From the IMG/VR virus record IMGVR_UViG_3300032236_002285, positions 412,237 through 476,236 of that record: a stretch of 64,000 bases of DNA. One strand, given 5' to 3'. The notes under the pieces were generated by a model. It made no database searches and was not told where the DNA came from. It was given only the letters and a program-made list of their open reading frames with translations. Both the position numbers and the translations under genes were made by a program. This document shows positions 2,001 through 59,045 of this stretch, in pieces (the stretch's first letter is position 1; each line of letters begins with the position of its first letter).

Positions 2001-2531
2001 TTATTTACAAGATTTTATAATAGAAGAAATCTCAGCTTTAATTTTACCTAACTCTTCATATCCTAATTCTTTAGGGAATTTATTACCTACTTTCTTAACA
2101 CCAACATAGTCAGCTCTAAACATTACTTGACCAACGTGTTCATCACAACAATGAATCTCCAAGTCATCACCTACTTGTTTAGTTTTACAATCTTTATTTG
2201 ATTCAATAATATCTTTGATTTTCTTTCTGAAAGAATCTCTCTTATCAGCTTTAACTTCTTTATGTTTATCTTTAGTTCTTACTGACTTCTCAGCAACACC
2301 TTCACCTAACCAACTTGGTTTGCCCATACCATCTTGCCAACCACCTTTTGAGTCAGAGTCATCATATCTTTCATCATCTCTTGGATACATTCCATCTGGA
2401 TCTTCTTTCTGAGATCTTTTTATTCTTTTTTCTCTTTTCTCAGCATCCTCTTTAGCTTTGTGTGGAAAATTAGAGATAGCTGTTTTTTCTGCTGGAGATA
2501 ACTCCTCATTAAATCTCTTTAAGTATTTCAT
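2001..2531 (-). CDS. Hypothetical protein with CTS-like N-terminus (putative head internal protein)
   Basis: Starts MKYLKRFNEE; highly charged. Confidence 0.65.
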   Translation of the reverse strand: MKYLKRFNEELSPAEKTAISNFPHKAKEDAEKREKRIKRSQKEDPDGMYPRDDERYDDSDSKGGWQDGMGKPSWLGEGVAEKSVRTKDKHKEVKADKRDSFRKKIKDIIESNKDCKTKQVGDDLEIHCCDEHVGQVMFRADYVGVKKVGNKFPKELGYEELGKIKAEISSIIKSCK

Positions 2532-2582
2532 ATTTTAATATGTATTTTTATAATGTATATATAAAATTTTACTGCATAAAAA

Positions 2583-2600
2583 AACTCACCGAAGTGAGTT
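2583..2600. terminator. Hairpin terminator
   Basis: aactcac-cgaa-gtgagtt flanked by A/T tracts. Confidence 0.6.
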
Positions 2601-2607
2601 TCTTAAA

Positions 2608-3258
2608 TTATTTACTTAAAAGTTTTATTAAGTCTTCTGTGATTTTAGTAATCATCTTTTTACCTTCAACTTCTAATAAAGGAATGTTTTTAACCATTGA
2701 GTATTTATCATTACCATCAACAACTATTTTAGAAATAGCTTCAATGAACTTTTTATCTTTACCATATTTCTTAGTATAGTATCCTTTTAACTCGTTAACG
2801 AATTTAGATAAATCAACACCTTCTTTGTAGTTATATTTAACCATTTGAAGTTCGTTGTCTTGCTTCTCAACCATAATATACCAAATAGACTTCTTAGAAA
2901 CTTTAACATTCTCAAGGAAGTTATAAGCTTTAGATGCTTTAGTATTCTTAGGGAACTTAGCAACCTTACCAGTGAAGTTTACATTTTCATGTGTTTTATC
3001 ACCTTTCATTTCAATATCATTTTCAAATTCATCTTCGTCAGAAGGTAAATCTACCGTTTGATCTTGAGGAATCAAGTTTTTTCTTGAAGCTGGTTTTTCG
3101 ATTTTTTTAGAATCTTTAGGCACATTAGGATTTGCTGGCAAATCTGAATCAGTAGCCGGTTGAGCGTCTAACGAAGGATTAACCTCTTCAATCTTAGATT
3201 TGCTCTTGATATCTGAGAATTTCTTAAATCCAACAATCTTTTTGTTTTCTTCTGCCAT
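2608..3258 (-). CDS. Hypothetical protein (probable virion/head-associated)
   Basis: 216-aa ORF, upstream TAATATATA at 3283-3291. Confidence 0.65.
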   Translation of the reverse strand: MAEENKKIVGFKKFSDIKSKSKIEEVNPSLDAQPATDSDLPANPNVPKDSKKIEKPASRKNLIPQDQTVDLPSDEDEFENDIEMKGDKTHENVNFTGKVAKFPKNTKASKAYNFLENVKVSKKSIWYIMVEKQDNELQMVKYNYKEGVDLSKFVNELKGYYTKKYGKDKKFIEAISKIVVDGNDKYSMVKNIPLLEVEGKKMITKITEDLIKLLSK

Positions 3259-3323
3259 TTGATTTTATTACGTTTTGTCTATTATATATTAAATAAATTA
3301 TTTAGTTTTCTTGATTTTTAAAA

Positions 3324-3575
3324 TTATCTTTGTCTATAGTGATATTTGTCTACCATATAGTTCTTCCAGTTCTTCATAATGTTCATTTGGTCAAACAAAA
3401 TAGCTACCAATGGTTGCATTTTATTTAGCCAATTATTCATTAAGTCATTTTGAAAAATGTAAGGTGACAAAGACTTATCAAGTATAACCTCATCATATTT
3501 CACAAAATTAGTATCATCATCATGAAGATGTTTCATATGATATAATTCTGGTAACTGATTCTTTTCGTATAACAT
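3324..3575 (-). CDS. Hypothetical protein next to baseplate wedge gene
   Basis: 83-aa ORF, upstream TAATATATA at 3580-3588. Confidence 0.6.
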   Translation of the reverse strand: MLYEKNQLPELYHMKHLHDDDTNFVKYDEVILDKSLSPYIFQNDLMNNWLNKMQPLVAILFDQMNIMKNWKNYMVDKYHYRQR

Positions 3576-3588
3576 ATCTTATATATTA

Positions 3589-6495: not shown

Positions 6496-6933
6496 ATGAA
6501 ACACTTAAAATCATATAAGATCTACGAAAGTGATAATGTTTGTACTACTTGTAACGGAACTGGTGAAGTAGATAGAGAGATTAATATGTGGGGTGATATG
6601 GGTAGATATGAGTGTGAGGATTGTAATGGAACTGGTAAACTAAGCACTCAATCATTTACAAAAGATTTAAGATCATTCACAGATGAATCTCAATCAGAAT
6701 TGAAATCATTACTGGATAAGTATGAAATAAAATACGGCGCTGTTTTACCTAAAGTTGAAAGATATTCTGATAATCATGAAGATGTTGAGAAGGTAGAAAT
6801 AGAAGCTCAGTTATACTCAACTTCTACATTAACTAAAGAATTACTTGAAGAAATAAATGAAAAATATGTTGATTATAATATTCATTTTGATACTTACAAT
6901 CACTTATATCTAATGGTTTATAAACTTTACTAA
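6496..6933 (+). CDS. CTS-like leader + DnaJ-type CxxCxGxG zinc finger protein
   Basis: Likely start at ATG 6496 (MKHLKSYKIYES); CTTCNGTG and CEDCNGTG repeats. Confidence 0.7.
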   Translation: MKHLKSYKIYESDNVCTTCNGTGEVDREINMWGDMGRYECEDCNGTGKLSTQSFTKDLRSFTDESQSELKSLLDKYEIKYGAVLPKVERYSDNHEDVEKVEIEAQLYSTSTLTKELLEEINEKYVDYNIHFDTYNHLYLMVYKLY

Positions 6934-7568: not shown

Positions 7569-8612
7569 ATGTCAGTTGGTACAAAATATGCTACAGCCTT
7601 TACGAATGGTGTTACAATTCCAGGTTTTACTAATATTGGTAAAGTTGCCATAGATACAAACCCAGGTGTCGGAGATTATACACTCGGTAACTTTGTTGGT
7701 GGTATAAATGGCTCATATGACTACACTTCATATATTATTATATCTGATACAACTACAGCTCTTATTGATAATAGAAGCACTGGTAATCACACGGGTTCGG
7801 CTTTACCTAATCAACCAACATTTTTTGCTTCTAAATTTAAAACTGATGAAAGTTTTTTAAGAATGGTTAATAGACTACCAGCAAGATCAGGTCAAACTGC
7901 TTTTACTGATCCTTTATTAGCTTCTTCCTGGCTTAGGTCAAATGGTTATTGGACTACTTATGTAACACCGGTACTATCATTAGATGCTGGTAACCCAGCA
8001 AGTTACCCAGGAACCGGAAATACATGGACTGATACTATTGGTGGTAAAACATTCAATTTATATAATGGCGTTGGTTACGATCCAAACAATGGTGGTAAGT
8101 TTTATTTTTATGCACCAGCGGGTCAATATGCTGAGTGTAATACAAGTTTACCTGATTTAAATACTTGGTCAGTTGGTGTTTGGCACTATTATACTGGTCA
8201 AAATATTGGTTCTGGTATGTGTATTGTAACTGAAGTTTACCCAGGAGTAAATAATAATATAAACTACTCTTTAGGAGATAACGATACTGGCGGTGATATA
8301 AGTGCAGGATTTTTTGATGGCGCTTGGAGAGTAAGTAATCCTTATAGTTTAACACCTAATAATTGGTATTATATCGTTGGTACCTATGATGGTAGTACAA
8401 TTAGTCTTTATGTTAATGGTAGTCTAGTACAATCAAATAATTATAATGGTTACCCAATATCATCCCAGGGTGGTATAAGATTAATGAGAAGATGGGATAA
8501 TCCTGATTATTGGGATGGTTATTTATCTACGGTTGATATTTATGATCAAGCATTAGATTCATCAAAGATATCATCTATCTTTAATTCAACTAAATCAAGA
8601 TTTGGTTTGTAA
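7569..8612 (+). CDS. LamG/concanavalin-A jelly-roll domain protein (virion/tail-associated)
   Basis: LSLDAGNPASYPGTGNTWTD, NNWYYIVGTYDG..ISLYVNG, IYDQAL motifs. Confidence 0.85.
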   Translation: MSVGTKYATAFTNGVTIPGFTNIGKVAIDTNPGVGDYTLGNFVGGINGSYDYTSYIIISDTTTALIDNRSTGNHTGSALPNQPTFFASKFKTDESFLRMVNRLPARSGQTAFTDPLLASSWLRSNGYWTTYVTPVLSLDAGNPASYPGTGNTWTDTIGGKTFNLYNGVGYDPNNGGKFYFYAPAGQYAECNTSLPDLNTWSVGVWHYYTGQNIGSGMCIVTEVYPGVNNNINYSLGDNDTGGDISAGFFDGAWRVSNPYSLTPNNWYYIVGTYDGSTISLYVNGSLVQSNNYNGYPISSQGGIRLMRRWDNPDYWDGYLSTVDIYDQALDSSKISSIFNSTKSRFGL

Positions 8613-8614: not shown

Positions 8615-8860
8615 TTATCTAATTGGTTTGTAATTAGGAATAGCACCTTTGTAATTAGTGTTACCTTTTCTGATTTCTTCATGTTCAGCTTCTACTGCTG
8701 CTTGATATTCAGGATCATTCTTTTCATCCTGTTTACAATTCATACAAATAACATCTTCATTAAACATAGACATTGTAGTAACACCATTAGTTGGCTCACC
8801 ACATCTATCACAGATAGATTTATTCATTTCAAATGATTCGTATGTTTTTAAGTGTTTCAT
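8615..8860 (-). CDS. CTS-like leader + small zinc-finger protein
   Basis: MKHLKTYESFE; CDRC...CMNC. Confidence 0.7.
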   Translation of the reverse strand: MKHLKTYESFEMNKSICDRCGEPTNGVTTMSMFNEDVICMNCKQDEKNDPEYQAAVEAEHEEIRKGNTNYKGAIPNYKPIR

Positions 8861-9453: not shown

Positions 9454-10086
9454 ATGAGCAAGATAAAACAACTTGAGATTAAAAAACTATTGAAAGAGTT
9501 AGATTTTATTGAATCTGATTATAACTATAAAAGTGAAATAATAAATGAGGCTGATAGTAATTTCATTAAAACGGTTAATGATCTACTTGAAGAGCATCCA
9601 TTATTAAAAGAGGTATTTGACAAAAAAATTAATAGTAAGCTAGATCAAATATTTGAAAAAAAATCAGAACAGATAAAAGAAAAGATTGAAGTTGATATCG
9701 AAAAAGAAAATCAAGAGGAAGTATTTGAAGATGTTATAATTGAAAAGTTTGTAGATGATAAGGTTAAAAAACTTTATAGAGAAATAGCTAAACTAACACA
9801 TCCAGATAGAGTCAGTAATAAAAAACTAAACGACCTGTATATTAAAGCAACCGATTGCTATCATAACAATGATAGACCCGGAACTTATACTATTTGTGAT
9901 GAGTTAGATATAGACTATGAACCAGATGATTCAGATAATCAAATGATAAGTAGTAAGATTTCTAGCATTAAAGGTAAGATTAATTTCATAGAATCAACTA
10001 TGACTTGGAATTGGTACCACTCAAATGATGAAAAAGAAAAAGAACAAATGGTGTTAAGATATATTAAAAATAGATTAGATAATTGA
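9454..10086 (+). CDS. J-domain (HPD) co-chaperone-like protein
   Basis: VKKLYREIAKLTHPDR..LNDLYIKATDCY matches J-domain helices II-III. Confidence 0.75.
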   Translation: MSKIKQLEIKKLLKELDFIESDYNYKSEIINEADSNFIKTVNDLLEEHPLLKEVFDKKINSKLDQIFEKKSEQIKEKIEVDIEKENQEEVFEDVIIEKFVDDKVKKLYREIAKLTHPDRVSNKKLNDLYIKATDCYHNNDRPGTYTICDELDIDYEPDDSDNQMISSKISSIKGKINFIESTMTWNWYHSNDEKEKEQMVLRYIKNRLDN

Positions 10087-10707
10087 TATTTTAACTTTTC
10101 TTTCGTTTAATAATGATTGTAACTCATCTTTTCTGAAAAATCTCTTATAAATATCGTTTTCCTTATCAAGGTTTTGAAGTTCCCAAGTATTACCATCAGC
10201 TGTTGTGTAGATATAATTCTCGTCACCATCTGCAACTTCAATAGTTTTAGATGAAAGTTTATCATAAAACTTTTTAACATCACCATTAATTTGAAATAGT
10301 TTAACATCTTCCCAGTCTTTATTAGTTTCATTCCATGTTTGAAAAGCAATATAAACAGGGTTTTCTAGTTCATTGGAATTAATATCATAAATAAACATCC
10401 ATTTACAAGGTTTATTGACAAATGTTTGATAATCTTCTGTATTTTGAACTGGTGACTTTTTCAAACCTAAAGAAGATAGAGAATTAATAAATTCTATGTT
10501 ATCTGATAAAAAGTCTAAAGTAAGTCTACCTTGATAAAAATCTTTAGGTAATTTTAAAGTATCAAAAATATCTTTTTCTTCAGCTGAAATAGCCGAAAGA
10601 AGCACATCATGCCATATATTCATCGATTCTAGTATATCAACTGACATAGTAACCAAGTCGATAACTAAAGATTCTTTGAATTGTTTGTATGTTTTTATTG
10701 TCTTCAT
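10075..10707 (-). CDS. Hypothetical protein with CTS-like N-terminus
   Basis: MKTIKTYKQFKES. Confidence 0.7.
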   Translation of the reverse strand: MKTIKTYKQFKESLVIDLVTMSVDILESMNIWHDVLLSAISAEEKDIFDTLKLPKDFYQGRLTLDFLSDNIEFINSLSSLGLKKSPVQNTEDYQTFVNKPCKWMFIYDINSNELENPVYIAFQTWNETNKDWEDVKLFQINGDVKKFYDKLSSKTIEVADGDENYIYTTADGNTWELQNLDKENDIYKRFFRKDELQSLLNERKVKISII

Positions 10708-10724: not shown

Positions 10725-10744
10725 TTTTAATATATATATTAAAA
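10725..10744. promoter_or_regulatory. Perfect 20-bp palindrome, putative bidirectional phage late promoter
   Basis: ttttaatatatatattaaaa between divergent CTS-type genes; contains TAATATATA on both strands. Confidence 0.55.
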
Positions 10745-10762: not shown

Positions 10763-12136
10763 ATGAAATGGTTGAGAGGTTATAAATTATTCAAAGAAGC
10801 TAAGCAAGAAAAATCTTATAAGAATTTAATTAATGAGATATGTACTTGTATGGTACTCTTAAACAATGAATTCTTAGATAATTTATTAGATAGAGGATTG
10901 AAAGCAAGATATTCTGAAAACTCAGAAATATTTGTTACTGACTTAAAAAATTTGTTATTAGCTAAGAATAGATTGAATTTAGGTAAGTTTGAAGGTGATA
11001 CTTGTATTGCTGATGATGAGCTAGCAAAGGTTAATATGGCTTTTGATGGTATTGAGTTTGATATTGAGAAAGATTGGGATAAATTAGTTTCTGCTAGAAC
11101 AACTGCTAGAAATATTATTGATAAGTTATTATTAGATTCTAAACTAAAACCAGAGATGATTAAAAATATCTACTGGATTGGTCCTAATAAAGATACCGAT
11201 CATGAGGAAGATATAGTTATAGAAGATAAAAATGGTCAACAATATAGTTTTTACTTAAATAAAAATCTTGCTACACAAAAAACTGCTTCATTTAGTTTAT
11301 TTGCTGATGACTTGATTGGTGCTGATATTGATAAATTATATAAAGATGAGTATTTACCTAAATGGGATAAATTAACTCAAGAATGGATTAGATTAATCTA
11401 TGAGAATGCTAATAAAAATATTCAACAATTAATTGAGAAGTTTATTGACCCTAAAAGAATTGATACAATTGGTTATTTTGAATACTATGACATAAGACAT
11501 AAAGACCCAAAATTCAAACACTTAGGTGAATTTGTTAGAGAGTTTGAAAAGAATATTTTAAAGTTTTCAGATTTAATGTCTGAAATATGGAAGAATAAAG
11601 ATAATTGCTTTATGGACTCAAATAGAGTTACTAAGGAATGGATGGAAGTTAAAATAGTTATTCTTAACTCTAAAATTCTTGAGAATCTATTAACAACAAG
11701 TCTTAAATCAAATCATGTTGATGATATTCAAAAAGTTGAAGATAGTTGGAAATTGGCTGGTGGAACCGTTAAGATGAAACTATTTAAGACTTTAGTTGAA
11801 AAAATGGGTTGTCTAGAAAGACCTGTTTACTTCTTGGGTAAAAATGGTGACATCTTTAATCTAGTCCCATCAAGAGAATTCTTTAGAGAAAACTATGATG
11901 ACTTAAATATTAAATTTGATTATCATGTTAACTTTAATGTTAGTGACGAAGAAGAGAATAATGATTTCACAATTAAAATAAAACTAGAGTTAGATGACAA
12001 CACATTGATAGATATGTTTGTTATAGTTAAATTCTCTGGTGGTGAAATGTCTGGTAAATTATCAGCTAAATATAAATTTGATATCGCTGATAACTTTAAT
12101 TATTTAATTTCCAAAAAACAATCTAGTGTTGAATAA
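10763..12136 (+). CDS. Hypothetical protein with CTS-like N-terminus
   Basis: Likely start ATG 10763 (MKWLRGYKLFKEA), 457 aa. Confidence 0.75.
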   Translation: MKWLRGYKLFKEAKQEKSYKNLINEICTCMVLLNNEFLDNLLDRGLKARYSENSEIFVTDLKNLLLAKNRLNLGKFEGDTCIADDELAKVNMAFDGIEFDIEKDWDKLVSARTTARNIIDKLLLDSKLKPEMIKNIYWIGPNKDTDHEEDIVIEDKNGQQYSFYLNKNLATQKTASFSLFADDLIGADIDKLYKDEYLPKWDKLTQEWIRLIYENANKNIQQLIEKFIDPKRIDTIGYFEYYDIRHKDPKFKHLGEFVREFEKNILKFSDLMSEIWKNKDNCFMDSNRVTKEWMEVKIVILNSKILENLLTTSLKSNHVDDIQKVEDSWKLAGGTVKMKLFKTLVEKMGCLERPVYFLGKNGDIFNLVPSREFFRENYDDLNIKFDYHVNFNVSDEEENNDFTIKIKLELDDNTLIDMFVIVKFSGGEMSGKLSAKYKFDIADNFNYLISKKQSSVE

Positions 12137-36435: not shown

Positions 36436-36556
36436 TTTTATTTTATTTTTATTTCTTATATAAAATCAAGGATTAAATGTTTAATTATTAATATATACAG
36501 AAAATTAAACCGTTAAAATTGGTTTTTACCAAAATAAATTTAATATATAATCTACT

Positions 36557-38224
36557 ATGAAATGGATAAAAGACAGAGAAAAATTCTTAAACGAGGCTAA
36601 GCTTCGTGACGTTATTTTCCAAAGACAAGCTAAAGAAGTTAGCCGTATTTGGGGAGAAAAATTCCTTGATTATGAAGAAGTTACACCTACTGATAAAATT
36701 AAACAAGGTAAGTGGAAGCTATCTGAAGAAGATAAAAATAAAGTATTAGGCAAATTTTTTGATGCTAATATGGAAGTTGTTACTGGTATATTCAATAGTT
36801 TACCAGATAAATTTGCTGAAGTTTTGGCACAATCTATTAACACTGAATTACTTAGAAATGATAAATTCAAAGTAATAGCTAAAGACTTAAATATTAAAAA
36901 TCCATCCATAGACCAAATTGTTATTATATTCGATCCTATCTTTAGAAAAATATCAGTATCTGAAACAATGGCTACTGAGATTATCCAAAAAGATGAGAAT
37001 GGTAGACCAGTAAAAGATGAAGCTGGTAATATGATTAAAATTAAGAAAGAAAAAGGCGATTTAATGTTCACTAATAACTTAGTTAATATCAATACATTTG
37101 TTGATGACTTTAATAGATGTTTCACTGAAGAAAAAGTAGGTGTTAATTTTGAAGAAAGAAATATACAAAGATTAAGAAGTGCTGCTAGTATGGATGAGAA
37201 TCAAGAGTATAAAGTTGATTTCAAAATTTTTGACAAAGATGTTTATTTATCTATCACACATAATCCAAAAGACATTTTGAATATGTCTATTTCTAAGTTC
37301 TATGCTTCTTGTCAACATTTATATTCAGGTGGTTATAGAGAACAAGTTTTAGGTAACGTATTTGACCCTAACTCTATTCCTGCTTTCTTAACATTTGAGA
37401 CTCCAATTTATTGGGATGATGAAAAGATATCTGATCAATTACCACTTTCAAGAATGGTGATTAGAAATATTGAAACATTTGACGAACAATCAACTGAGGC
37501 TAAATTATTTTTTGATAGAGCTTATCCAGATAGAATGAAAGAAGTATTTGATGAGATAGTTGAAAAGTATGCTGATATGAAACAAAATACTGATAGAAAT
37601 AGTATTACTTATGTATTTACACCAGATATTGACACAGAAGATAAGTTAAGAGATCCTTATATGGATAGATTAGGAATTCAAAGAAAACCTTATATCGGTA
37701 AAAACACTAGAACTCTTTACTTAAATAGAATGCATGACTGGTCTAATGTTAAGATTGCTCCAGATGCTAAGATTAAAGAATTAATTATTGAAACAACTGA
37801 TATTCCTGAAGACTTAACTAAAGTTCCTTTGAATCCAGATTGGGTTAAATTCAAATACCTAACTATTAATTCATTATCAAACTTTGATAAAATTAAAACA
37901 GATTCAATTGCTTTTGATAAGTGTAAATTAGATACTTCAGTTTTAGAAGAGATGAACAAATCAAATCCTAATATCAAAAAGTTACAAATTGTTAGTTGTG
38001 ATTTAACAGGGTCTTTAGGTTTCTCTCAATTCCAAAGCTTAGAAGAGCTACATATTATTTATACATTAGATACTATTGAAGAGTTAAAAGACCTAACTGA
38101 AAACCTTAAAATTAAGAAACTTGTTATATCAGGTGACTTGATTAAAAATAAAGAAGCTAAGACTCAAATTAACCAGGTTAGACAACGTGGTATAAAAGTA
38201 GAAATCGTAGGTCCAGTTATATAA
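36557..38224 (+). CDS. CTS-like leader protein with C-terminal LRR-like solenoid
   Basis: MKWIKDREKFLNEA; periodic LxxLxI repeats in last ~170 aa; TAATATATA at 36541-36549. Confidence 0.7.
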   Translation: MKWIKDREKFLNEAKLRDVIFQRQAKEVSRIWGEKFLDYEEVTPTDKIKQGKWKLSEEDKNKVLGKFFDANMEVVTGIFNSLPDKFAEVLAQSINTELLRNDKFKVIAKDLNIKNPSIDQIVIIFDPIFRKISVSETMATEIIQKDENGRPVKDEAGNMIKIKKEKGDLMFTNNLVNINTFVDDFNRCFTEEKVGVNFEERNIQRLRSAASMDENQEYKVDFKIFDKDVYLSITHNPKDILNMSISKFYASCQHLYSGGYREQVLGNVFDPNSIPAFLTFETPIYWDDEKISDQLPLSRMVIRNIETFDEQSTEAKLFFDRAYPDRMKEVFDEIVEKYADMKQNTDRNSITYVFTPDIDTEDKLRDPYMDRLGIQRKPYIGKNTRTLYLNRMHDWSNVKIAPDAKIKELIIETTDIPEDLTKVPLNPDWVKFKYLTINSLSNFDKIKTDSIAFDKCKLDTSVLEEMNKSNPNIKKLQIVSCDLTGSLGFSQFQSLEELHIIYTLDTIEELKDLTENLKIKKLVISGDLIKNKEAKTQINQVRQRGIKVEIVGPVI

Positions 38225-38225: not shown

Positions 38226-39857
38226 ATGAAACATTTAAAACACATACAAGTATTTGAAGCCTTTGAATCTAAGATTCTTAGCAAAACATTAGGTTATATT
38301 AAAGAACCAAATGATAGAGAAAAGTTTTTTGACCAAATCAAAAGACTATGTAATTCTATAGATTATCCTTATTCAGAAATGTCTGATGACTTCTTTGAAT
38401 ATTTACCATTTAAAAAAGCAATCAACAAAGCAGCAATGACTGGTGATGAACCTTGTGAAGCAACTTCAAAAAGTGAATTCCCGGAATATGCGGTAGATGG
38501 AGCTAAGTGTGAAGGTGGTAAACTTAAAAGAAAATGGGGAGCTAGGACAAGAGAGGTAGTTTGTCCAGTTTGTAATGGTACTGGGGTTAAACCAAAAAAA
38601 TCTGAAGTAAAATTAGTTAAATTCTGGTTTACATCAGAAGGTAAATATGTTACTACAACAATTGTTGATGGTGTGATAAGAAGTGGTAAATCTGGTTCTA
38701 AAATATCAACTAGATTATCAGATTATATAGTATCTTCAAATGTTTCGGATATAAACACACTAACCGGTGGTGAAATTGTTAGTGTTAATATAAGAGGTGA
38801 TCAAGTTATTGCCTACATAGTCAAAGAGTATGGTAGATATTTTGCTATACAAAATAAAGTCTCAGGTAGCACACCAAGTTCTTCAAGTTGGAGGTCATAT
38901 GGTAAGTATTCATGGGCTTTAGGTCGTGGTGAATACTCTGATATGAAACTTCTTACAAAAAAACCAAAAAGTAAAGAAGAGGAAGAAGTAGATCCATATA
39001 CTTGGAATGTTGGTGTTAATTTCTCATATGGTCAAGTATCAGTAAATAGTTCAATAGATGTTCAAAATGTAATTAAAGATGCTCACTTTGCTATTGTATT
39101 TGATTATGGTAAATTGAAAAAGTCTGAATTTAAAAATAGAGAAGAAACTAAACAAAAAAGAGAAGAGGCTAAAGAAGGCTCTAAATTAGATCCTAATCAA
39201 TCAGATGTAGAAATAAGAAAAAGAAATATTGAAAGATATGTTAATTTACTTTCTCAAAAGTTAGACATATCGACTGATATAGGAAATTGTAATAGACTAG
39301 TAGTTAGAGCTTTAGGTCATAAAGCTGCTTTATATATTGTTTATGGAACAAACATCTATTCTTATTTAACAAACCTTATCGACTCTTATATGAAGTTTAT
39401 GAAGGCTGATGACAATAATACTAAAAAATCATATGCTGAAGATATATCAGAAAAAACAAATGATATGTTTAAGAGTGGTATGAAAAGAGCTGATAGAGCC
39501 AACGATATTGTTAAAGATGTTAGATCCAAACTTAAAGCAAATAATGCAGATGAAAAATATATTCAATTGTTAGATTTAACTCAAAAACTAAGTGATGCTA
39601 TCTATGATAATATTAAAAACTATCAAATAGATAGTATTGAAGATTTAGAAGTTGTTGCTCAAAAGATTAGCTCAATCAGAAACATTCTTAAATCAGATAG
39701 ATATGGACTAAGTAGATATTTCAATTATTATATTTCTTATGTAGTGGATAATAGACCAGAGAGGGCATATGATTATTTATCAGATCCTTATTATGTAAAT
39801 ATTGATGCTGCCTTAGAAAACTTACCAAGAATAATAACAATTATCTCTAAACTATAA
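38226..39857 (+). CDS. CTS-like leader protein with DnaJ-type zinc finger
   Basis: MKHLKHIQVFEAFES; CEGG..CPVCNGTG. Confidence 0.7.
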   Translation: MKHLKHIQVFEAFESKILSKTLGYIKEPNDREKFFDQIKRLCNSIDYPYSEMSDDFFEYLPFKKAINKAAMTGDEPCEATSKSEFPEYAVDGAKCEGGKLKRKWGARTREVVCPVCNGTGVKPKKSEVKLVKFWFTSEGKYVTTTIVDGVIRSGKSGSKISTRLSDYIVSSNVSDINTLTGGEIVSVNIRGDQVIAYIVKEYGRYFAIQNKVSGSTPSSSSWRSYGKYSWALGRGEYSDMKLLTKKPKSKEEEEVDPYTWNVGVNFSYGQVSVNSSIDVQNVIKDAHFAIVFDYGKLKKSEFKNREETKQKREEAKEGSKLDPNQSDVEIRKRNIERYVNLLSQKLDISTDIGNCNRLVVRALGHKAALYIVYGTNIYSYLTNLIDSYMKFMKADDNNTKKSYAEDISEKTNDMFKSGMKRADRANDIVKDVRSKLKANNADEKYIQLLDLTQKLSDAIYDNIKNYQIDSIEDLEVVAQKISSIRNILKSDRYGLSRYFNYYISYVVDNRPERAYDYLSDPYYVNIDAALENLPRIITIISKL

Positions 39858-50889: not shown

Positions 50890-51158
50890 ATTCCTAACTT
50901 ATTTAGTTTTAAATCTCTTTCACCAGCCAAATCCACAAAACACTCAATTGGTACAAACTCTTCATGAAAGTAATAAGGACCTTTTAACTTAACACATATT
51001 CTATCCGGAAAATGAAAATCAACATCAGTTACTTTATATTTTTCACCTATGATTAAACGCTCATTATCATAATCACCACCTATATAACCAATAGAATAAG
51101 AATTTAACTTAACACAAGTTAAAATATCACCTATTTTGAAATCTTTATATGTTTTCAT
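50886..51158 (-). CDS. SH3-like small protein, C-tag
   Basis: IGDILTCV..LIIGEKYKV; ends RDLKLNKLGI. Confidence 0.7.
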   Translation of the reverse strand: MKTYKDFKIGDILTCVKLNSYSIGYIGGDYDNERLIIGEKYKVTDVDFHFPDRICVKLKGPYYFHEEFVPIECFVDLAGERDLKLNKLGI

Positions 51159-52043: not shown

Positions 52044-52116
52044 TTCTCAAAGTTTTAATTGTTTGCCTCATAGCACGAGCAAACGTTTCATCAGCTAATC
52101 CATTCATCCAACTCAT
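51994..52116 (-). CDS. 40-aa C-tag protein (not in ORF track)
   Basis: MSWMNGLADETF...LRKNKIRRIFDIEV*; ATGA-coupled to the ACP-like gene. Confidence 0.5.
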   Translation of the reverse strand: MSWMNGLADETFARAMRQTIKTLRNELRKNKIRRIFDIEV

Positions 52117-52403
52117 AAACCCAACTCTTCTATTTTCTTATTACGAAGATACGATTTAAATACCATCGGCTTTTTATTTCCTCCAATAAAAGCATCCACC
52201 ACTTCATCTGGAATAACAATGTCTAATCTTTTCTCTAGCTCCATTGCCAACTCAACACAATCTAAATCATCATAACCATTATCATTCCAAGTTTTATTCA
52301 TATCTAATGGATAACCTATCTTTTCATTAGCAACCTCCATCAAAATCTCTGGAGTTACCTTAACTATATCTGGACACTTTTCGATCATTTCTAATTCTGT
52401 CAT
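52113..52403 (-). CDS. Acyl carrier protein-like protein lacking the pantetheine serine, C-tag
   Basis: GYDDLDCVELAMELEKRLDIVIPDE versus ACP GxDSLDxVELxMxxE..F.IxIPDE; ends RNKKIEELGL. Confidence 0.8.
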   Translation of the reverse strand: MTELEMIEKCPDIVKVTPEILMEVANEKIGYPLDMNKTWNDNGYDDLDCVELAMELEKRLDIVIPDEVVDAFIGGNKKPMVFKSYLRNKKIEELGL

Positions 52404-52777
52404 AGTATTTGCTTTAATTTTTTATCTCTTATTTCTTGTAATAGTGAAGGTATATACTGACCCCACTTTATATAAATCTTCATCTTTTCAGCATCCCAAT
52501 CAAAATCATCAATTGATTTATAACTATTTTTGCCATATACCGCCGTGTGATGATTAATCAACATATCAATACACTCATTCATAAACACCTGACGAATTCC
52601 AATATCCGATATCTCACCAGCCCAATCTGTTAACTGCTTATGAAATTCAGACCACTCATTTAACTTTCTCATTCGCTTACTATGTTGACGGGTTTCTTTA
52701 AAGAATCTCCAAACTATTCCAACAATTACAAACAAAAACACTAAAAATAATGCCGCTTGTATAATCTTAAATATCAT
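52400..52777 (-). CDS. N-terminal TM protein, C-tag
   Basis: Ends RDKKLKQIL. Confidence 0.7.
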   Translation of the reverse strand: MIFKIIQAALFLVFLFVIVGIVWRFFKETRQHSKRMRKLNEWSEFHKQLTDWAGEISDIGIRQVFMNECIDMLINHHTAVYGKNSYKSIDDFDWDAEKMKIYIKWGQYIPSLLQEIRDKKLKQIL

Positions 52778-53067
52778 ATACCTAACTTATTTAACTTTTC
52801 TTGACGATTTATTAATTTAGTAATATCAACCAAATACCCTTTAGTAAAACAACCAGCAATAGTTAACCTAACACTCGTCATTTTATCCCAATCTATTGTA
52901 AATTCAGCATCATACTCTACCTTACCAAACACCACCTTAGGACCTTTATCTGAATACATATGAATAGTAATAATATCACCAATATCAAAATGATGATAAT
53001 AATGAACATCAGTATCTAAACAGATACTAACACCACCCTTCATTACTTCTAAATAATAAACCGTCAT
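52774..53067 (-). CDS. Small protein, C-tag
   Basis: Probable start ATG 53067, 6 nt after TATCTTTG; ends RQEKLNKLGI. Confidence 0.7.
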   Translation of the reverse strand: MTVYYLEVMKGGVSICLDTDVHYYHHFDIGDIITIHMYSDKGPKVVFGKVEYDAEFTIDWDKMTSVRLTIAGCFTKGYLVDITKLINRQEKLNKLGI

Positions 53068-55258: not shown

Positions 55259-55263
55259 GTCAA

Positions 55264-55290
55264 TTATATACCTAATGACTCTAATTTATC
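55264..55290 (-). pseudogene. Orphan C-tag-coding remnant
   Basis: GAT AAA TTA GAG TCA TTA GGT ATA TAA (DKLESLGI*) directly after the stop of 55289..55534. Confidence 0.6.
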
Positions 55291-55534
55291 ATATACCTAA
55301 TGATTTTAGTTTTTTATCACGACTTTCGTCTAAGTTTAATTCTGTATCGCGCCAGTGAGCGTATAAACTCTTAGTTTGTAATTGCTTTTTAGAACATCTT
55401 TTACATATTCGGAATAAGGTATGCTGCTGCCAACGGTAGGTTGAGCTGTTTTGCTTTTTTACCACAAGAGAGCCAAAAGAATCGCGATCTGTAAAGTATC
55501 GCCAGTTGTGGCCTATTATTTTACAAAGTATCAT
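55289..55534 (-). CDS. DUF1660-like small protein, C-tag
   Basis: CKIIGHNW..CKRC; ends RDKKLKSLGI. Confidence 0.7.
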   Translation of the reverse strand: MILCKIIGHNWRYFTDRDSFGSLVVKKQNSSTYRWQQHTLFRICKRCSKKQLQTKSLYAHWRDTELNLDESRDKKLKSLGI

Positions 55535-55930: not shown

Positions 55931-55935
55931 GTTTA

Positions 55936-56692: not shown

Positions 56693-56748
56693 AGTGTAGT
56701 GATTTATACAAAGATATGAAATATTACTAACAAAACAAAATTGTGAGG

Positions 56749-57306
56749 TTAAATGTTATTATATCCCTCAACGGATTCTACTGGTGGTTTTCCAATCTCT
56801 TGTAGGAAATCGTTTAATCTATCGATGATTATCTCATCATCATGTATAATATCATAATCATTAAACAATTCTATATAATCTTTATTATAGAATAATAGCC
56901 AAATGTCACTAACTGGGTTATTATAAAGGTAAATATCACCAACAACCACCTTTGGAAAATGTTCTAACGATGTTAATTTATTATTTTTACAACTAAAATA
57001 ACCACCAACGGATTCAGGACAATCTTCCAAAGATGTTAATTGATTATAAGAACAATTAAAATTACCACCAACGTATTTAGGAGCACCTTCCAAAGATATT
57101 AGTTTATTATCAATACAATTAAAATCACCAGTAACCTTTCTAAACTTTAATGGTAGCTTTGCTAATCCTTTATTTTCTAAATCAACATTACCATCAACAT
57201 CAATCGAACCATCTTCGTTAATAGTATAATCTTCTATACCACAAATTTTACATATATCATCAATGTCATTTTCAATAAATGATTCATATAGTTTTAAGTA
57301 TTTCAT
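56749..57306 (-). CDS. LRR protein paralog A with CTS-like leader
   Basis: Probable start ATG 57306 (MKYLKLYESFIE); about 22-aa repeats VGGxFxCxxNxLTSLExxP. Confidence 0.85.
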   Translation of the reverse strand: MKYLKLYESFIENDIDDICKICGIEDYTINEDGSIDVDGNVDLENKGLAKLPLKFRKVTGDFNCIDNKLISLEGAPKYVGGNFNCSYNQLTSLEDCPESVGGYFSCKNNKLTSLEHFPKVVVGDIYLYNNPVSDIWLLFYNKDYIELFNDYDIIHDDEIIIDRLNDFLQEIGKPPVESVEGYNNI

Positions 57307-57310
57307 TATC

Positions 57311-57922
57311 TTATATATTATTATATCCTTCAACGGATTTCACTGGTGGCTTACCAATCTCTTGTAAGAACTCATTTAATCTATCAATGATAATGCTATT
57401 ACCACGAATAACATCGTAATCGTTGAGTAATTCAATCTTATCTTTATCCTTGAATAATTGCCAAATATTATCAACCGGATTATCATAAAGGTAAATATCA
57501 CCACCAACCTGTGGGAAATGTTCTAAAGATCTTAATTGATTATTACAACAATTAAAATAACCACTAACTGATCTAGGAGAACCAACCAAACTAGTTAATT
57601 GATTATGACTACAATCAAAACGATCACCTACCGATTCAGGACAACCTTGCAAACTAGTTAATCTATTGAAAGAGCAATAAAAACTACCACCAACATATTG
57701 AGGAGAACCCTCTAATGATGTTAATTGATTATTAGAACAATAAAAAGTACCAGTAACCTTACCGAACTTTAGTGGTAGCTTTTTTAATCCTTTATTATTT
57801 AAATTAACATTACCATCGACATCAATAGATCCATCCGAGTTTATAGTATAGTTTTTTATACCATACTTTTTACAGATAGCATCAATTTCATTAAATGATT
57901 CATATAGTTTTAAGTATTTCAC
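57311..57922 (-). CDS. LRR protein paralog B with CTS-like leader
   Basis: GTG start, MKYLKLYESFNE; one more repeat than paralog A; near-identical caps. Confidence 0.85.
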   Translation of the reverse strand: MKYLKLYESFNEIDAICKKYGIKNYTINSDGSIDVDGNVNLNNKGLKKLPLKFGKVTGTFYCSNNQLTSLEGSPQYVGGSFYCSFNRLTSLQGCPESVGDRFDCSHNQLTSLVGSPRSVSGYFNCCNNQLRSLEHFPQVGGDIYLYDNPVDNIWQLFKDKDKIELLNDYDVIRGNSIIIDRLNEFLQEIGKPPVKSVEGYNNI

Positions 57923-57949
57923 AAGGTATATATTAAATGTCTTTTATAT

Positions 57950-58045
57950 AAAAAAAGACAACCTGCCCTTGATTTCTTCAGACATTTTATAGTCCGCCCT
58001 TCGTACTTTGATATCCAGTCGGCAACCTGTTTATCGTTTCTGACA
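57950..58045 (-). ncRNA. Candidate small RNA
   Basis: TATCTTTG (58049-58056) followed by about 95 GC-richer nt ending in a weak hairpin plus U-tract; only mini-ORFs under 20 aa. Confidence 0.3.
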
Positions 58046-58071
58046 ATACAAAGATAAGGAGGATTACTTAA

Positions 58072-58347
58072 TTAAACAAGGGATTCTAATAATTTATTTC
58101 TTTTATATACTTTATAATCTTCTAATGGCATCCAATGTGTTGGTTGAAAAGGAAATTGAGGATGATTGTCGGTAAAGAAGTTATCTGAATCTTGTGGGTC
58201 TTGAAAGTTCCATTTATATTCACTACTCATAAGATACCACATAATAGCTTCTTGGTTACCATCAGTAGTCATAACATCATATCCTTCTGGTGGATAGTTG
58301 CTATCTGGTTGGTTATTTAAATCTTTATTATTAAAGGCTATCCACAT
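58072..58347 (-). CDS. Small protein (DUF551-like PTHWMPL tail), C-tag
   Basis: MWI..N..P..V...PTHWMPL; ends RNKLLESLV. Confidence 0.65.
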   Translation of the reverse strand: MWIAFNNKDLNNQPDSNYPPEGYDVMTTDGNQEAIMWYLMSSEYKWNFQDPQDSDNFFTDNHPQFPFQPTHWMPLEDYKVYKRNKLLESLV

Positions 58348-58349
58348 TG

Positions 58350-58613
58350 TTATATTAGTTCTGATAATTTAATACCTCTTAAAATTGATTTCCATTTACT
58401 TACTTCTGAGTTATCTATAATGCTATCTGCTTTATAGATAATAACTTTATCATCAACTATTTCATAGATAACTTTTTTAGTATGATTTAAATGTGACATT
58501 GGTTTACCAATTAACATAATCATATTATCACCTATAAGTTTAACATCTTGTATCTCAGTGGTGTGATTAGGATAGTGTAGTTTAATAAGGTCTATAATTT
58601 CTTGTTTATCCAT
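58350..58613 (-). CDS. Small protein, C-tag
   Basis: Ends RGIKLSELI; TATCTTTG 4 nt upstream of ATG. Confidence 0.7.
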   Translation of the reverse strand: MDKQEIIDLIKLHYPNHTTEIQDVKLIGDNMIMLIGKPMSHLNHTKKVIYEIVDDKVIIYKADSIIDNSEVSKWKSILRGIKLSELI

Positions 58614-58661
58614 TAGGCAAAGATAATATTTAGCAATTAATTATTTTTATAATGTATAGGT

Positions 58662-59045
58662 TTATTTCAAATCCTTTACTGATAACTTACCTTTAAATAA
58701 ACAACCTTGTGATTCAAAATCTTTTCTTTCAAGTCCTAAACTTGTTAAATAATTAGAAACTTCTTCTAATTTAGAAAGGTCAAATTCAAAAATACTAGAC
58801 ATATATTGTCCATTTTTATCTTTATTAAAACCTAAATTGAACTTATCATTCAACATATCCATTATTTTAACATTTACCTTGCTATCAAGATCCTTGTTTA
58901 ATATTCTTGGCATTCCATTATTTGTGAATACCCAAATAAAAACAGATTCTGCATATGTACCCATAACATTTCTTTTCCAAGATGTTTTAGCACCTGAGAC
59001 AATATCATTGAATAAACCTTCGTTAAATCTTTTTAAGTGTTTCAT
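58662..59045 (-). CDS. Hypothetical protein with CTS-like N-terminus
   Basis: MKHLKRFNEG. Confidence 0.7.
   Translation of the reverse strand: MKHLKRFNEGLFNDIVSGAKTSWKRNVMGTYAESVFIWVFTNNGMPRILNKDLDSKVNVKIMDMLNDKFNLGFNKDKNGQYMSSIFEFDLSKLEEVSNYLTSLGLERKDFESQGCLFKGKLSVKDLK

What the first reader, a model, noticed from the sequence alone, without database searches (positions are those of the whole stretch)
2001..59045. Shared N-terminal capsid-targeting-like leader on about 10 unrelated proteins
Seen directly: MKYLKRFNEE (2531), MKHLKSYKIYES (6496), MKHLKTYESFE (8860), MKTIKTYKQFKES (10707), MKWLRGYKLFKEA (10763), MKWIKDREKFLNEA (36557), MKHLKHIQVFEAFES (38226), MKYLKLYESFIE (57306), MKYLKLYESFNE (57922), MKHLKRFNEG (59045). 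Established: T4 internal proteins carry a roughly 10-aa capsid targeting sequence (IPIII MKTYQEFIAE) removed by gp21 after Glu. Inference: these LRR, zinc-finger and ORFan proteins are packaged in the head and injected with the DNA. None carries the C-tag, and several sit behind TAATATATA, suggesting two exclusive address labels (virion cargo versus early cytoplasmic).
Basis: partly seen in the sequence, partly recalled or inferred. Interest (0 to 1): 0.65.

Follow-up and report, generated by a model that had tools for sequence, protein, structure and literature searches.

The report
T4-like capsid-targeting leader, huge phage
About one gene in ten of this 476-kb uncultured phage starts with the same 11-residue peptide, which closely resembles the tag phage T4 uses to load proteins into its head for injection, so this phage may inject dozens of different proteins into its host.

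Summary
Nine of the ten listed N-termini share the motif M-[KR]-[HY]-[LI]-K-x-[YF]-x-x-F-E. The ORF at 36557 does not fit, and 57922 starts with GTG.

In the whole 476-kb phage, 59 of about 634 ORFs carry the motif. Only 4 of 132,441 internal positions score as well. The bodies of the 59 proteins fall into 54 unrelated groups, and codon use shows selection on the peptide, not the DNA.

The capsid-targeting reading is well supported, but only indirectly:
- The phage has T4-type portal, major capsid protein (MCP), terminase and a gp21-type prohead protease with catalytic His and Ser conserved.
- The protease is fused to a scaffold-like tail with 11 tandem YSEY[LI]AE repeats, close to the T4 capsid targeting sequence (CTS) YQEFIAE.
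- A matrix built only from this phage's leaders ranks T4 IPIII, IPII and IPI as the top 3 of 199 T4 ORFs.
- 57 of 59 leaders have a Glu at residues 8-12.
- Leader genes sit behind the promoter-like motif that precedes the head genes (30/55, against 116/503 other genes and 0/76 C-tag genes).
- Tenacibaculum phage PTm1 (same G+C, Bacteroidota host, related head genes) has no leader, which argues against a composition or host-translation artefact.

No proteomic evidence exists. I rate it a new variant of a known kind, with confidence about 0.55.

The parts
2001..2531 (-). Leader protein, 176 aa, MKYLKRFNEELSP... (FNE subtype); no family match
   Evidence: matrix score 22.6
2556..2564 (-). Late-promoter-like TTATATATA, 24 nt before the ATG at 2531
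   Evidence: motif class
6496..6933 (+). Leader protein, 145 aa, MKHLKSYKIYES...; CxxC zinc-ribbon-like body (DnaJ_CXXCXGXG 1.1e-5, below Pfam's threshold); no promoter motif of its own
8615..8860 (-). Leader protein, 81 aa, MKHLKTYESFEMNK...; small CxxC protein (phrog_27033, 3e-23, function unknown)
   Evidence: matrix score 28.4
10075..10707 (-). Leader protein, 210 aa, MKTIKTYKQFKESL...; highly conserved core gene of the clade (1517 homologues)
   Evidence: AF2 model: residues 1-27 below pLDDT 50
10728..10741 (.). Palindromic TAATATATATATTA that reads TAATATATA on both strands, 25-26 nt before the divergent leader genes at 10707(-) and 10763(+)
10763..12136 (+). Leader protein, 457 aa, MKWLRGYKLFKEAK... 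(weaker variant, score 16.5); orthologue in LR745206 keeps it (MKWLRNFELFKEAK)
36557..38224 (+). 555-aa ORF, MKWIKDREKFLNEA: doubtful member (score -0.7, no aromatic residue at position 7); has TAATATATA 7 nt upstream (36541-36549)
38226..39857 (+). Leader protein, 543 aa, MKHLKHIQVFEAFES...; starts 2 nt after the stop of the preceding ORF; orthologue in G003 starts MKYLKLFEAFES
56749..57306 (-). Leader protein, 185 aa, MKYLKLYESFIEN...; paralogue of the next ORF; TAATATATA 5 nt upstream (57312-57320)
57311..57922 (-). Leader protein, 203 aa, GTG start, VKYLKLYESFNE...; weak LRR_4 match; TAATATATA 4 nt upstream (57927-57935)
58662..59045 (-). Leader protein, 127 aa, MKHLKRFNEGLF...; TTATATATA 22 nt upstream (59068-59076)

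Best explanation
The shared N-terminus is a capsid-targeting propeptide of the T4 internal-protein type. It is lengthened by three residues (M-K-[HY]-L ahead of the T4-like core K-T-[YF]-x-x-F) and is used on a very large scale.

Proposed mechanism:
1. Leader genes are transcribed late, together with the head genes, from the T[AT]ATATATA promoter-like motif.
2. The short amphipathic leader helix docks on the prohead core. The core is most likely built from the C-terminal part of the 720-aa protease-scaffold fusion, whose 11 tandem YSEY[LI]AENLDKNI repeats resemble the leader and the T4 CTS.
3. The gp21-type protease removes the leader after the conserved Glu at residues 8-12.
4. The released proteins stay in the head and enter the host cell with the DNA.

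Shown here: the motif, its restriction to N-termini, peptide-level selection, unrelated bodies, the T4-type head genes, the conserved catalytic residues of the protease, the repeats, the promoter association and the likeness to the T4 CTS.

Inferred: docking, cleavage, packaging and injection.
For: (1) N-terminus-specific motif on 59 of about 634 ORFs with 54 unrelated bodies.

(2) Synonymous codons at conserved positions follow genome-wide usage, and K/R, L/I and Y/F exchanges occur, so selection acts on the peptide.

(3) T4-type head module in the same genome:
- Portal_T4, 4.7e-59.
- Gp23 MCP, 4.5e-27, with a T4-like N-terminal KKWxPxLE segment.
- gp17, gp4 and gp25 homologues.
- Head maturation protease (phrog_207, 1.2e-31). 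hhalign to T4 gp21 gives E 4.3e-5, with His73 and Ser128 aligned to the T4 catalytic His85 and Ser140.

(4) In T4 IPIII, residues 4 (Tyr) and 7 (Phe) carry targeting and residues 8 and 10 carry processing; gp21 cuts after L/I-x-E (PMC9026906). The leader keeps Y/F at position 7 (55/59) and F/Y at position 10 (39/59). Glu occurs at positions 8-12 in 57/59, most often followed by Ser, Ala, Leu or Asn.

(5) Columns 5-12 of the leader matrix rank T4 IPIII and IPII (15.5) and IPI (12.6) as the top 3 of 199 ORFs in 94 kb of T4. The next best scores 7.5.

(6) The protease carries 11 tandem YSEY[LI]AE repeats, conserved in 8 IMG/VR relatives and in LR756502, LR756504 and LR756501. Compare the T4 CTS YQEFIAE and the T4 gp22 [LI]AE sites.

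(7) The promoter-like T[AT]ATATATA precedes the portal, protease, MCP, terminase, gp4 and gp25 genes but not gp43, gp44 or gp46. It lies within 45 nt of 30/55 leader genes, 116/503 other genes and 0/76 C-tag genes (Fisher p 2.6e-6 for leader against other genes).

(8) AF2 model of a conserved 138-aa leader protein (pLDDT 84.8): the leader is a separate, low-confidence helix (residues 2-11), followed by a break at 12-14 just after Glu11, then a confident helical bundle.

(9) Some bodies suit cargo:
- An OmpA peptidoglycan-binding domain without a signal peptide.
- An ART-PolyVal ADP-ribosyltransferase in a relative; T4 Alt, a packaged ADP-ribosylase, is the precedent.
- NUDIX, weak LRR and weak zinc-ribbon matches.
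Only 3 of 59 have a membrane-like segment.

(10) One leader gene (G000:53888-54361) lies directly upstream of the portal gene, behind the same motif.

(11) Negative control: Tenacibaculum phage PTm1 (29.7% GC, Bacteroidota host, related MCP and protease-scaffold) has 0 of 310 genes with the leader.
Against: - There is no virion proteome, no evidence of processing and no expression data. No RNA run holds the window.
- 9-13% of all genes would be head cargo, far more than in T4 (three internal proteins plus Alt). phiKZ-like heads hold more than twice as many different proteins as T4.
- Only about a third of leaders have L/I/V at P3 of the last Glu; Phe is as common. A strict T4 L/I-x-E site is therefore not general.
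- The tagged proteins are acidic (median pI 5.0 against 6.0). From memory, T4 IPII and IPIII are basic.
- In relatives the leader also sits on metabolic-looking enzymes (Pterin_4a, DeoC aldolase, thioesterase).
- The leader is three residues longer than the T4 CTS, and it is not known whether distance from the N-terminus matters.
- The 735-kb relative LR756501 has the scaffold repeats but few matches to the strict leader pattern (11 against 6 control).
Confidence: 0.55

Rival explanations
1. The leader is a real peptide address or docking helix, but its destination is not the capsid. Candidates are a phage-encoded hub, a chaperone or adaptor, a replication or assembly compartment, or a host factor. 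The likeness to the T4 CTS would then be convergent, because both are short amphipathic helices.
For: - The leader is a short amphipathic helix set apart from the body.
- It sits on many different bodies, including enzymes that seem odd as injected cargo (Pterin_4a, DeoC, NUDIX).
- The tagged proteins are acidic.
- The tagged set is very large.
- Nothing here shows physical association with heads.
Against: - The leader matrix picks exactly the three T4 internal proteins out of 199 T4 ORFs.
- The same genome has a T4-type head module with a gp21-type protease and CTS-like repeats in the scaffold part.
- 57 of 59 leaders have a Glu at residues 8-12.
- Leader genes share the promoter-like motif of the head genes.
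- No other candidate receptor was identified.
Confidence: 0.2
2. The shared start is a legacy of gene birth and shuffling, not a signal. On this view, a promoter plus first-codons cassette is copied or recombined in front of new ORFs, as regulatory cassettes (PeSLs) mediate shuffling in T4-type phages, or one old paralogous family has diverged beyond recognition except at its start.
For: - Leader genes lie in tandem arrays (G000 245.9-254.9 kb, 303-309 kb, 373-380 kb).
- A few pairs are recognisable paralogues.
- Half carry their own promoter-like motif at fixed spacing.
- Cassette-mediated shuffling is documented in T4-type phages (PMC2839356).
Against: - Neutral leftovers would decay. The motif is kept in orthologues whose bodies are only 33-75% identical, and F10 and E11 are invariant in a family of 212 homologues.
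- Synonymous sites vary while the amino acids stay.
- The bodies include unrelated Pfam folds (NUDIX, OmpA, ART, Pterin_4a, DeoC), so they are not one diverged family.
- Many genes with the same promoter and spacing lack the leader.
- Shuffling may explain how the tag spreads, but not why it is conserved.
Confidence: 0.13
3. The motif reflects translation start requirements. On this view, A-rich, unstructured first codons, or a nascent peptide that favours initiation on leaderless or short-leader late mRNAs, are selected in an AT-rich phage whose Bacteroidota host lacks Shine-Dalgarno pairing.
For: - Many leader genes have the promoter-like motif only 4-7 nt before the ATG, which suggests leaderless mRNAs.
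- There is a mild excess of AAA, TTA, CAC and TAC codons at positions 2-5.
Against: - Conservation reaches residues 7-11 and is at the amino-acid level.
- 47 genes with the same 4-7 nt spacing have no leader.
- The head genes themselves lack it.
- Phage PTm1, with the same G+C, a host of the same phylum and related head genes, has none.
- The score distribution is bimodal, not graded.
Confidence: 0.07

Closest known systems
Capsid targeting sequence (CTS) of phage T4 internal proteins IPI, IPII and IPIII
   Same: - An N-terminal peptide of about 10 residues on otherwise unrelated proteins.
- Core K-T-[YF]-x-x-F, with the two aromatic residues three apart. These are the positions needed for targeting in IPIII.
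- A Glu shortly after.
- The phage has the T4-type portal, gp23-type MCP and gp21-type protease.
- The leader matrix ranks the three T4 internal proteins first.
   Different: - Three extra residues (M-K-[HY]-L) precede the core.
- 59 to about 80 tagged genes per genome, against 3 in T4.
- The Glu often follows Phe directly ([LIV]-F-E or F-N-E) instead of I-A-E.
- The protease is fused to a repeat-bearing scaffold, whereas T4 has separate gp21 and gp22.
- The bodies are acidic.
- Nothing has been tested experimentally.
Propeptide-bearing head, inner-body and ejection proteins of phiKZ-like giant phages (phiKZ gp175, SPN3US gp245 proteases)
   Same: - A large number of different head-internal proteins.
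- A diverged gp21-like protease that cuts after Glu at a very short motif (S/A-x-E).
- Proteins ejected into the host (PMC9026906).
   Different: - As far as the review read here describes, the phiKZ-type propeptides are long and varied and share no 11-residue N-terminal leader.
- These phages belong to a different lineage. The huge phage studied here has a gp23-type MCP and a T4-type portal.
Cargo-loading or encapsulation peptides of encapsulins and bacterial microcompartments
   Same: A short terminal peptide, joined to the cargo by a linker, that docks diverse cargo inside a protein shell. This is a resemblance in how it works, recalled from memory and not tested here.
   Different: - No homology is claimed.
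- Those peptides are not removed by a maturation protease.
- Encapsulin tags are mostly C-terminal. The separate C-tag (...KLxxLGI) of this phage looks more like them, but it marks genes that never have the late promoter-like motif.
Prohead core scaffolding protein and protease fusion of Tenacibaculum phage PTm1
   Same: - Same gene order: portal, one ORF, protease-scaffold fusion, MCP.
- The protease domain is homologous (phmmer 3.4e-24).
   Different: - PTm1's scaffold part has a different repeat (FTKELSEGIEKWI-like).
- PTm1 has no leader-bearing genes (0 of 310).

Membership tests
T4-type capsid targeting sequence (internal-protein propeptide) | The same peptide of about 10 residues at the extreme N-terminus of proteins whose mature parts are unrelated | tested here: met
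   59 ORFs fall into 54 body clusters. Hits: 55/634 N-termini against 4/132,441 internal positions
T4-type capsid targeting sequence (internal-protein propeptide) | Aromatic residues at the two targeting positions (T4 IPIII Tyr4 and Phe7, three apart) after Lys-Thr | tested here: met
   Position 7 is Y or F in 55/59 and position 10 is F or Y in 39/59. K5 occurs in 48/59 and T6 is the commonest residue at position 6. The matrix ranks T4 IPIII, IPII and IPI as the top 3 of 199 T4 ORFs. Role of the T4 residues from PMC9026906
T4-type capsid targeting sequence (internal-protein propeptide) | Ends in a gp21 cleavage site, L/I-x-Glu, cut after Glu | tested here: inconclusive
   Glu at residues 8-12 in 57/59. 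P1' is most often S, A, L or N. P3 is L/I/V in 18 and F in 17 of 57. The specificity of this phage's protease is unknown; T4 gp21 also cuts x-x-E weakly (PMC12991175)
T4-type capsid targeting sequence (internal-protein propeptide) | The phage encodes a gp21-type prohead serine protease | tested here: met
   phrog_207, 1.2e-31. Pfam Peptidase_S77, 4.5e-4 (below the curated cut-off). hhalign to T4 gp21: E 4.3e-5, 28% identity, His73 and Ser128 aligned with the catalytic His85 and Ser140 and invariant in 9 relatives
T4-type capsid targeting sequence (internal-protein propeptide) | A scaffolding core (gp22-like) that receives the tagged proteins and is degraded at L/I-x-E sites | tested here: inconclusive
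   No gp22 sequence match. The C-terminal 490 aa of the protease holds 11 YSEY[LI]AE repeats and 13 [LI]AE sites. T4 gp22 has LIAE, KLAE, KIAE and WLAEN. The receptor role is inferred
T4-type capsid targeting sequence (internal-protein propeptide) | Tagged proteins are present in virions, lack the propeptide, and are injected | not testable with these tools
   The phage is uncultured. There is no proteome, and no RNA run holds the window
T4 superfamily head module | gp20-type portal, gp23-type MCP with an N-terminal propeptide-like segment, gp17-type terminase | tested here: met
   Portal_T4 4.7e-59; Gp23 4.5e-27; gp17 9.6e-50; gp4 and gp25 homologues. The MCP N-terminus KKWAPVLENMGV compares with T4 NKWKPLLEGEGL
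Sec/Tat signal peptide or lipoprotein signal | A hydrophobic core (and lipobox) after a basic N-terminus | tested here: not met
   The leader is hydrophilic to amphipathic and is followed by polar residues (polar fraction 0.61 at residues 12-25). The true lipoprotein-like N-termini in the genome look different

The most novel reading that the evidence does not exclude
Huge phages of the Mahaphage group that includes LR756502 and LR745206 load some 60-80 different proteins per genome into the head and inject them with the DNA. Across the clade this involves well over 150 unrelated protein families.

The address is an extended T4-type CTS that docks on an 11-fold array of CTS-like repeats in a protease-scaffold fusion. 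A second, mutually exclusive C-terminal tag (...R[DE]xKLxxLGI) marks a separate class of small proteins that never have the late promoter-like motif.

The leader would then be a sequence-readable list of a huge phage's injected arsenal.
Probability: 0.35. Interest if true: 0.85.

Novelty: new variant of a known kind. Interest (0 to 1): 0.68.

Why it matters
Most genes of huge phages have no known function, and none of the phages in this clade is cultured.

If the leader is a capsid address, one short motif would identify, from sequence alone, which proteins travel in the virion and act first in the host. These are likely anti-defence and takeover factors. The number of such proteins would be far larger than in any studied phage.

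It would also show that the T4 head-targeting system is old and portable across the T4 superfamily. It suggests a docking mechanism (leader against CTS-like scaffold repeats) that can be tested in T4 itself. And it offers a natural tag for loading foreign proteins into very large capsids.

The paired finding of an exclusive C-terminal tag suggests that these phages sort their many small proteins by terminal labels.

Tried and rejected
- **Complex prediction.** Protease-scaffold residues 1-470 with the window 6496 leader protein gave no answer: score 0.00, controls not run. This is not evidence either way.
- **Fold search.** The 138-aa leader protein model against PDB gave no match with E<=0.001, only generic helical bundles.
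- **Profile search against PDB sequences.** The protease alignment found nothing. hhalign to T4 gp21 did work.
- **tblastn of the 138-aa protein against 50,697 phage records.** No match.
- **Full-text search for six leader strings.** No paper holds any of them.
- **T4 gp55 late sigma factor against the genome.** No match, so the late transcription machinery is not identified.
- **Sequencing runs.** Only DNA metagenomes hold the stretch and none is RNA.
- **Leader contigs that seemed to lack T4-type head genes.** G003, G026, G029, G002 and others had no Portal_T4 or full Gp23 match. A positive control worked. G003 and G002 proved to be syntenic fragments of G000's 214-476 kb part, away from the head region. 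G029 and G026 are more distant fragments. This gives no evidence that the leader occurs outside the T4-type lineage.
- **Guess that the roughly 193-aa LYHGNRKG family is the ART-PolyVal member.** Not confirmed.
- **Frame-blind DNA pattern for K-x-[YF]-x-x-F-E.** Too unspecific to compare genomes.
- **Second AF2 model (210-aa protein).** Poor quality, pLDDT 64.7. Used only as weak support.


Full report
**Where the window lies.** The window is the last 64 kb (412,237-476,236) of a 476,236-bp IMG/VR virus record with 29.9% G+C. Its major capsid protein (MCP) is 69% identical to those of the uncultured 642-kb and 635-kb phages LR756502 and LR745206, and 52-54% identical to those of the 636-kb and 735-kb genomes. 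Al-Shayeb et al. place their four largest curated genomes (634-735 kb) in the Mahaphage clade, with predicted Bacteroidetes hosts (PMC7162821). The nearest cultured relatives by MCP, at 24-29% identity, are jumbo phages of Tenacibaculum, Chryseobacterium and Sphingomonas.

**The observation.** All ten N-termini are present as stated.
- 57922 starts with GTG.
- 36557 (MKWIKDREKFLNEA) does not fit the motif (score -0.7).
- The other nine score 16-28 on a position matrix.

The consensus over 59 members is M1 [K43/R14]2 [H25/Y25]3 [L44/I15]4 K5 [T/K/S]6 [Y30/F25]7 [E/N/K]8 x9 F10 E11.

The motif is restricted to N-termini:
- A strict pattern in all six frames hits 50 times, and 32 of these begin with ATG or GTG, nearly all at the head of long ORFs.
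- The matrix hits 55 of 634 N-termini, 2 of 2669 internal Met sites and 4 of 132,441 internal positions.
- Shuffled N-termini give a mean of 0.01 hits.
- The score distribution has two modes with nothing between them.

Shorter forms also occur, such as M-I-K-[KR]-Y-x-x-F-[IL]-x-E. The core [KR]-x-[YF]-x-x-[FY] begins at residue 5 in 32 proteins and at residues 2-4 in 24 more, against about 0.9 expected per position. The class may therefore reach about 80 genes, or 12-13%.

**Selection acts on the peptide, and the bodies are unrelated.** Codons at the conserved positions follow genome-wide usage, with only a mild preference for AAA, TTA, CAC and TAC. K/R, L/I and Y/F exchanges occur.

Without the first 15 residues, the 59 proteins form 54 BLASTP clusters.

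Fifty leader proteins were scanned against Pfam. Only three gave matches at or above Pfam's curated cut-offs: NUDIX, OmpA and a Toprim-like domain. There were also weak LRR and zinc-ribbon matches below those cut-offs.

In related contigs, 248 further leader ORFs form 115 clusters. Nine of these match Pfam families: Pterin_4a, DeoC, NUDIX, ART-PolyVal, three families of unknown or phage-specific function, a thioesterase and a weak His_biosynth match.

Orthologues in partial relatives usually keep the leader although the bodies are only 33-75% identical. In a conserved 138-aa family with 212 homologues, F10 and E11 are invariant.

**Distribution.** One degenerate DNA pattern for the leader found 104 stretches in IMG/VR. 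Almost all lie at ORF starts in contigs of 24-39% G+C, and many loci hold several leader ORFs.

Most of these contigs are 5-25% complete by CheckV's estimate, that is, fragments of much larger genomes. The nearly complete ones (249-436 kb) have the T4-type portal and MCP. Two contigs that seemed to lack these genes are syntenic fragments that do not cover the head region.

Counts of the pattern M-K-x-[LIVMF]-K-x-[YF], with the reversed-pattern control in brackets:

| Genome | Size | Matches | Control |
|---|---|---|---|
| LR756502 | 642 kb | 74 | 8 |
| LR745206 | 635 kb | 67 | 5 |
| LR756504 | 636 kb | 52 | 4 |
| This genome | 476 kb | 41 | 6 |
| LR756500 | 462 kb | 28 | 9 |
| LR756501 | 735 kb | 11 | 6 |
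| Lak-B5 | 544 kb | 10 | 3 |
| PTm1 | 225 kb | 3 | 2 |

PTm1 has the same G+C (29.7%), a Bacteroidota host and related head genes. None of its 310 genes scores above 4.4. The leader is therefore not a by-product of base composition or of the host's translation start rules.

**The head module is T4-type.** The genome encodes:
- a Portal_T4 protein (4.7e-59);
- a Gp23-family MCP (4.5e-27), whose conserved N-terminus (KKWAPVLENMGV) parallels T4 gp23 (NKWKPLLEGEGL);
- homologues of gp17, gp4 and gp25;
- a 720-aa head maturation protease (phrog_207, 1.2e-31; Peptidase_S77 below the cut-off).

hhalign aligns protease residues 26-134 with T4 gp21 residues 38-146 (E 4.3e-5). His73 and Ser128 lie opposite the catalytic His85 and Ser140, and both are invariant in nine relatives. 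The protease starts MKPVLIIEN, which resembles the LIE site near the N-terminus of gp21.

Its C-terminal part carries 11 tandem 14-residue repeats, YSEY[LI]AENLDKNI. They are conserved in eight IMG/VR relatives and in LR756502, LR756504 and LR756501, degenerate in LR756500, and replaced by a different repeat in PTm1. [LI]-A-E is the type of site at which T4 gp21 degrades gp22, and T4 gp22 itself contains LIAE, KLAE, KIAE and WLAEN.

**Likeness to the T4 CTS.** From the T4 record, IPII and IPIII start MKTYQEFIAE-A and IPI starts MKTFKEFTS.
- In IPIII, residues 4 and 7 (Tyr, Phe) carry targeting, and residues 8 and 10 carry processing (PMC9026906).
- The huge-phage leader contains K-T-[YF]-x-x-F at residues 5-10, which is the T4 core shifted by three residues.
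- As an unbiased test, columns 5-12 of the leader matrix were applied to residues 2-9 of all 199 ORFs of 60 aa or more in 94 kb of T4. The three best scores are IPIII and IPII (15.5) and IPI (12.6); the next is 7.5. No PTm1 gene and no non-leader gene of this phage reaches 12.6.
- The scaffold repeat YSEYIAE matches the T4 CTS YQEFIAE at five of seven positions, with Y for F at a sixth.
- Glu occurs at residues 8-12 in 57 of 59 leaders, followed mostly by Ser, Ala, Leu or Asn.
- The commonest subtype, K-[LIV]-F-E-[SAN], fits L/I-x-E. The F-N-E and Y-E-S-F subtypes fit only the looser x-x-E.

**Timing.** The motif T[AT]ATATATA lies 4-7 nt or 19-26 nt before the ATG of 138 genes. It precedes the portal, protease, MCP, terminase, gp4 and gp25 genes and many very large ORFs, but not the gp43, gp44 or gp46 homologues. 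It therefore behaves as the late promoter; this is an inference.

It lies within 45 nt of 30 of 55 leader genes, 116 of 503 other genes and 0 of 76 C-tag genes (p 2.6e-6 for leader against other genes, 1.6e-8 for C-tag against other genes). Seven of the ten window genes have it, including a palindromic copy that serves the divergent pair at 10707 and 10763. One leader gene lies directly upstream of the portal gene.

**Structure.** An AF2 model of the conserved 138-aa protein (pLDDT 84.8) shows the leader as a separate helix at residues 2-11 with low confidence. A break follows at residues 12-14, right after Glu11, and then a confident helical bundle. A poorer model of the 210-aa window protein leaves residues 1-27 below pLDDT 50.

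Leader proteins are soluble (3 of 59 have a membrane-like segment) and acidic. One has an OmpA peptidoglycan-binding domain but no signal peptide. That arrangement makes sense for a protein that reaches the periplasm by ejection.

**Verdict.** The motif is real, abundant and specific to a clade. It is best read as an extended T4-type capsid-targeting propeptide.

Shown here:
- the motif statistics;
- selection at the peptide level;
- the unrelated bodies;
- the T4-type head genes and protease residues;
- the CTS-like scaffold repeats;
- the promoter association;
- the cross-recognition of the T4 internal proteins.

Inferred:
- docking on the scaffold repeats;
- cleavage after Glu;
- packaging and injection.

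The main doubts are the unprecedented number of tagged genes, the loose fit to L/I-x-E, the acidic and sometimes metabolic cargo, and the absence of any proteomic or expression data.

Rivals:
- An address to a destination other than the head, 0.2.
- A shuffling legacy, 0.13.
- A translation-start effect, 0.07, which the PTm1 control and the codon data weaken strongly.

No paper in the searched library holds six representative leader strings. I rate the finding a new variant of a known kind.

Noticed in passing
window 23257-23478, 23741-23974, 23971-24198, 24195-24482, 24479-24706, 24703-25065, 43278-43892, 50500-50889, 50886-51158, 52113-52403, 52774-53067, 55289-55534, 60058-60315, 61127-61354, 61351-61626, 62056-62184, 62506-62778 (all - strand): A second shared tag: small proteins end in ...R[DE]xKLxxLGI. 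In six frames of the genome, K[LI]xx[LI]G[ILV] occurs 41 times, 27 of them within 0-2 residues of a stop. 21 (strict) to 76-77 (loose) genes carry it. They lie in long same-strand arrays, never have the late promoter-like motif (0/76) and almost never carry the leader (1, against 6.7 expected). The ending recalls encapsulin cargo peptides (from memory, untested). Function unknown.
   Followed up: partly
G000:59876-62038 (outside the window; locus L134:6877-9039): 720-aa fusion of a gp21-type prohead protease with a scaffold-like tail. The tail holds 11 tandem 14-aa repeats YSEY[LI]AENLDKNI and a His/Glu/Asp-rich tract (residues about 470-545). It is conserved in 8 IMG/VR relatives and in the 636-735-kb Mahaphage genomes.
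   Followed up: partly
genome-wide; in the window e.g. 36541-36549, 57312-57320, 57927-57935 (short spacing) and 2556-2564, 59068-59076 (long spacing): The late-promoter-like T[AT]ATATATA has two sharp spacings to the start codon, 4-7 nt and 19-26 nt. The short class implies leaderless or nearly leaderless mRNAs. No -35-like partner was looked for, and no T4 gp55 homologue was found.
   Followed up: partly
window 10728-10741: Palindromic TAATATATATATTA between two divergent leader genes reads as the promoter-like motif on both strands.
   Followed up: no
window 50886-51158 (-): A 90-aa ORF starts MKTYKDFKIG, almost the T4 form of the CTS without the three-residue extension, and also ends with the C-tag (ERDLKLNKLGI). 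It is the only window ORF that could carry both labels. Its leader matrix score is low, so this may be chance.
   Followed up: no
window 10075-10707 (-): This 210-aa leader protein has 1517 homologues in the protein collection. The best 120 are 85-95% identical, on contigs up to 817 kb. It is therefore an abundant, strongly conserved core gene of the clade, unlike most leader genes. Some JGI records name it 'maltooligosyltrehalose synthase'; no Pfam family matched it here, so the name has no support from these searches.
   Followed up: partly
G000:124177-125073 (outside the window; locus L128): A 298-aa leader protein with an OmpA-family peptidoglycan-binding domain (32.3 bits, cut-off 27.2) and no signal peptide. 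It is flanked by two further leader genes that are paralogues of each other.
   Followed up: partly
window 34978-36435 (-) and 7569-8612 (+): A 485-aa ORF with a tyrosinase central domain (1.3e-28) and a hydrophobic N-terminus, and a 347-aa ORF with a Laminin_G_3/ConA-like domain (3.1e-19). Both are unusual accessory genes for a phage.
   Followed up: no
window 12188-16483 (+): A 1431-aa ORF behind the late promoter-like motif, with no Pfam match. It is the stretch of the window compared by DNA, and 18-19% of it matches LR756502 and LR745206 at 69-71% identity. It may be a large virion protein.
   Followed up: no
G000:109357 (- strand, outside the window): One internal copy of the leader-like peptide (LKNLKRFNEEFD) lies 212 residues into a 299-aa ORF that itself starts MKHIKKH. 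It may mark a gene fusion or a mis-called start.
   Followed up: no
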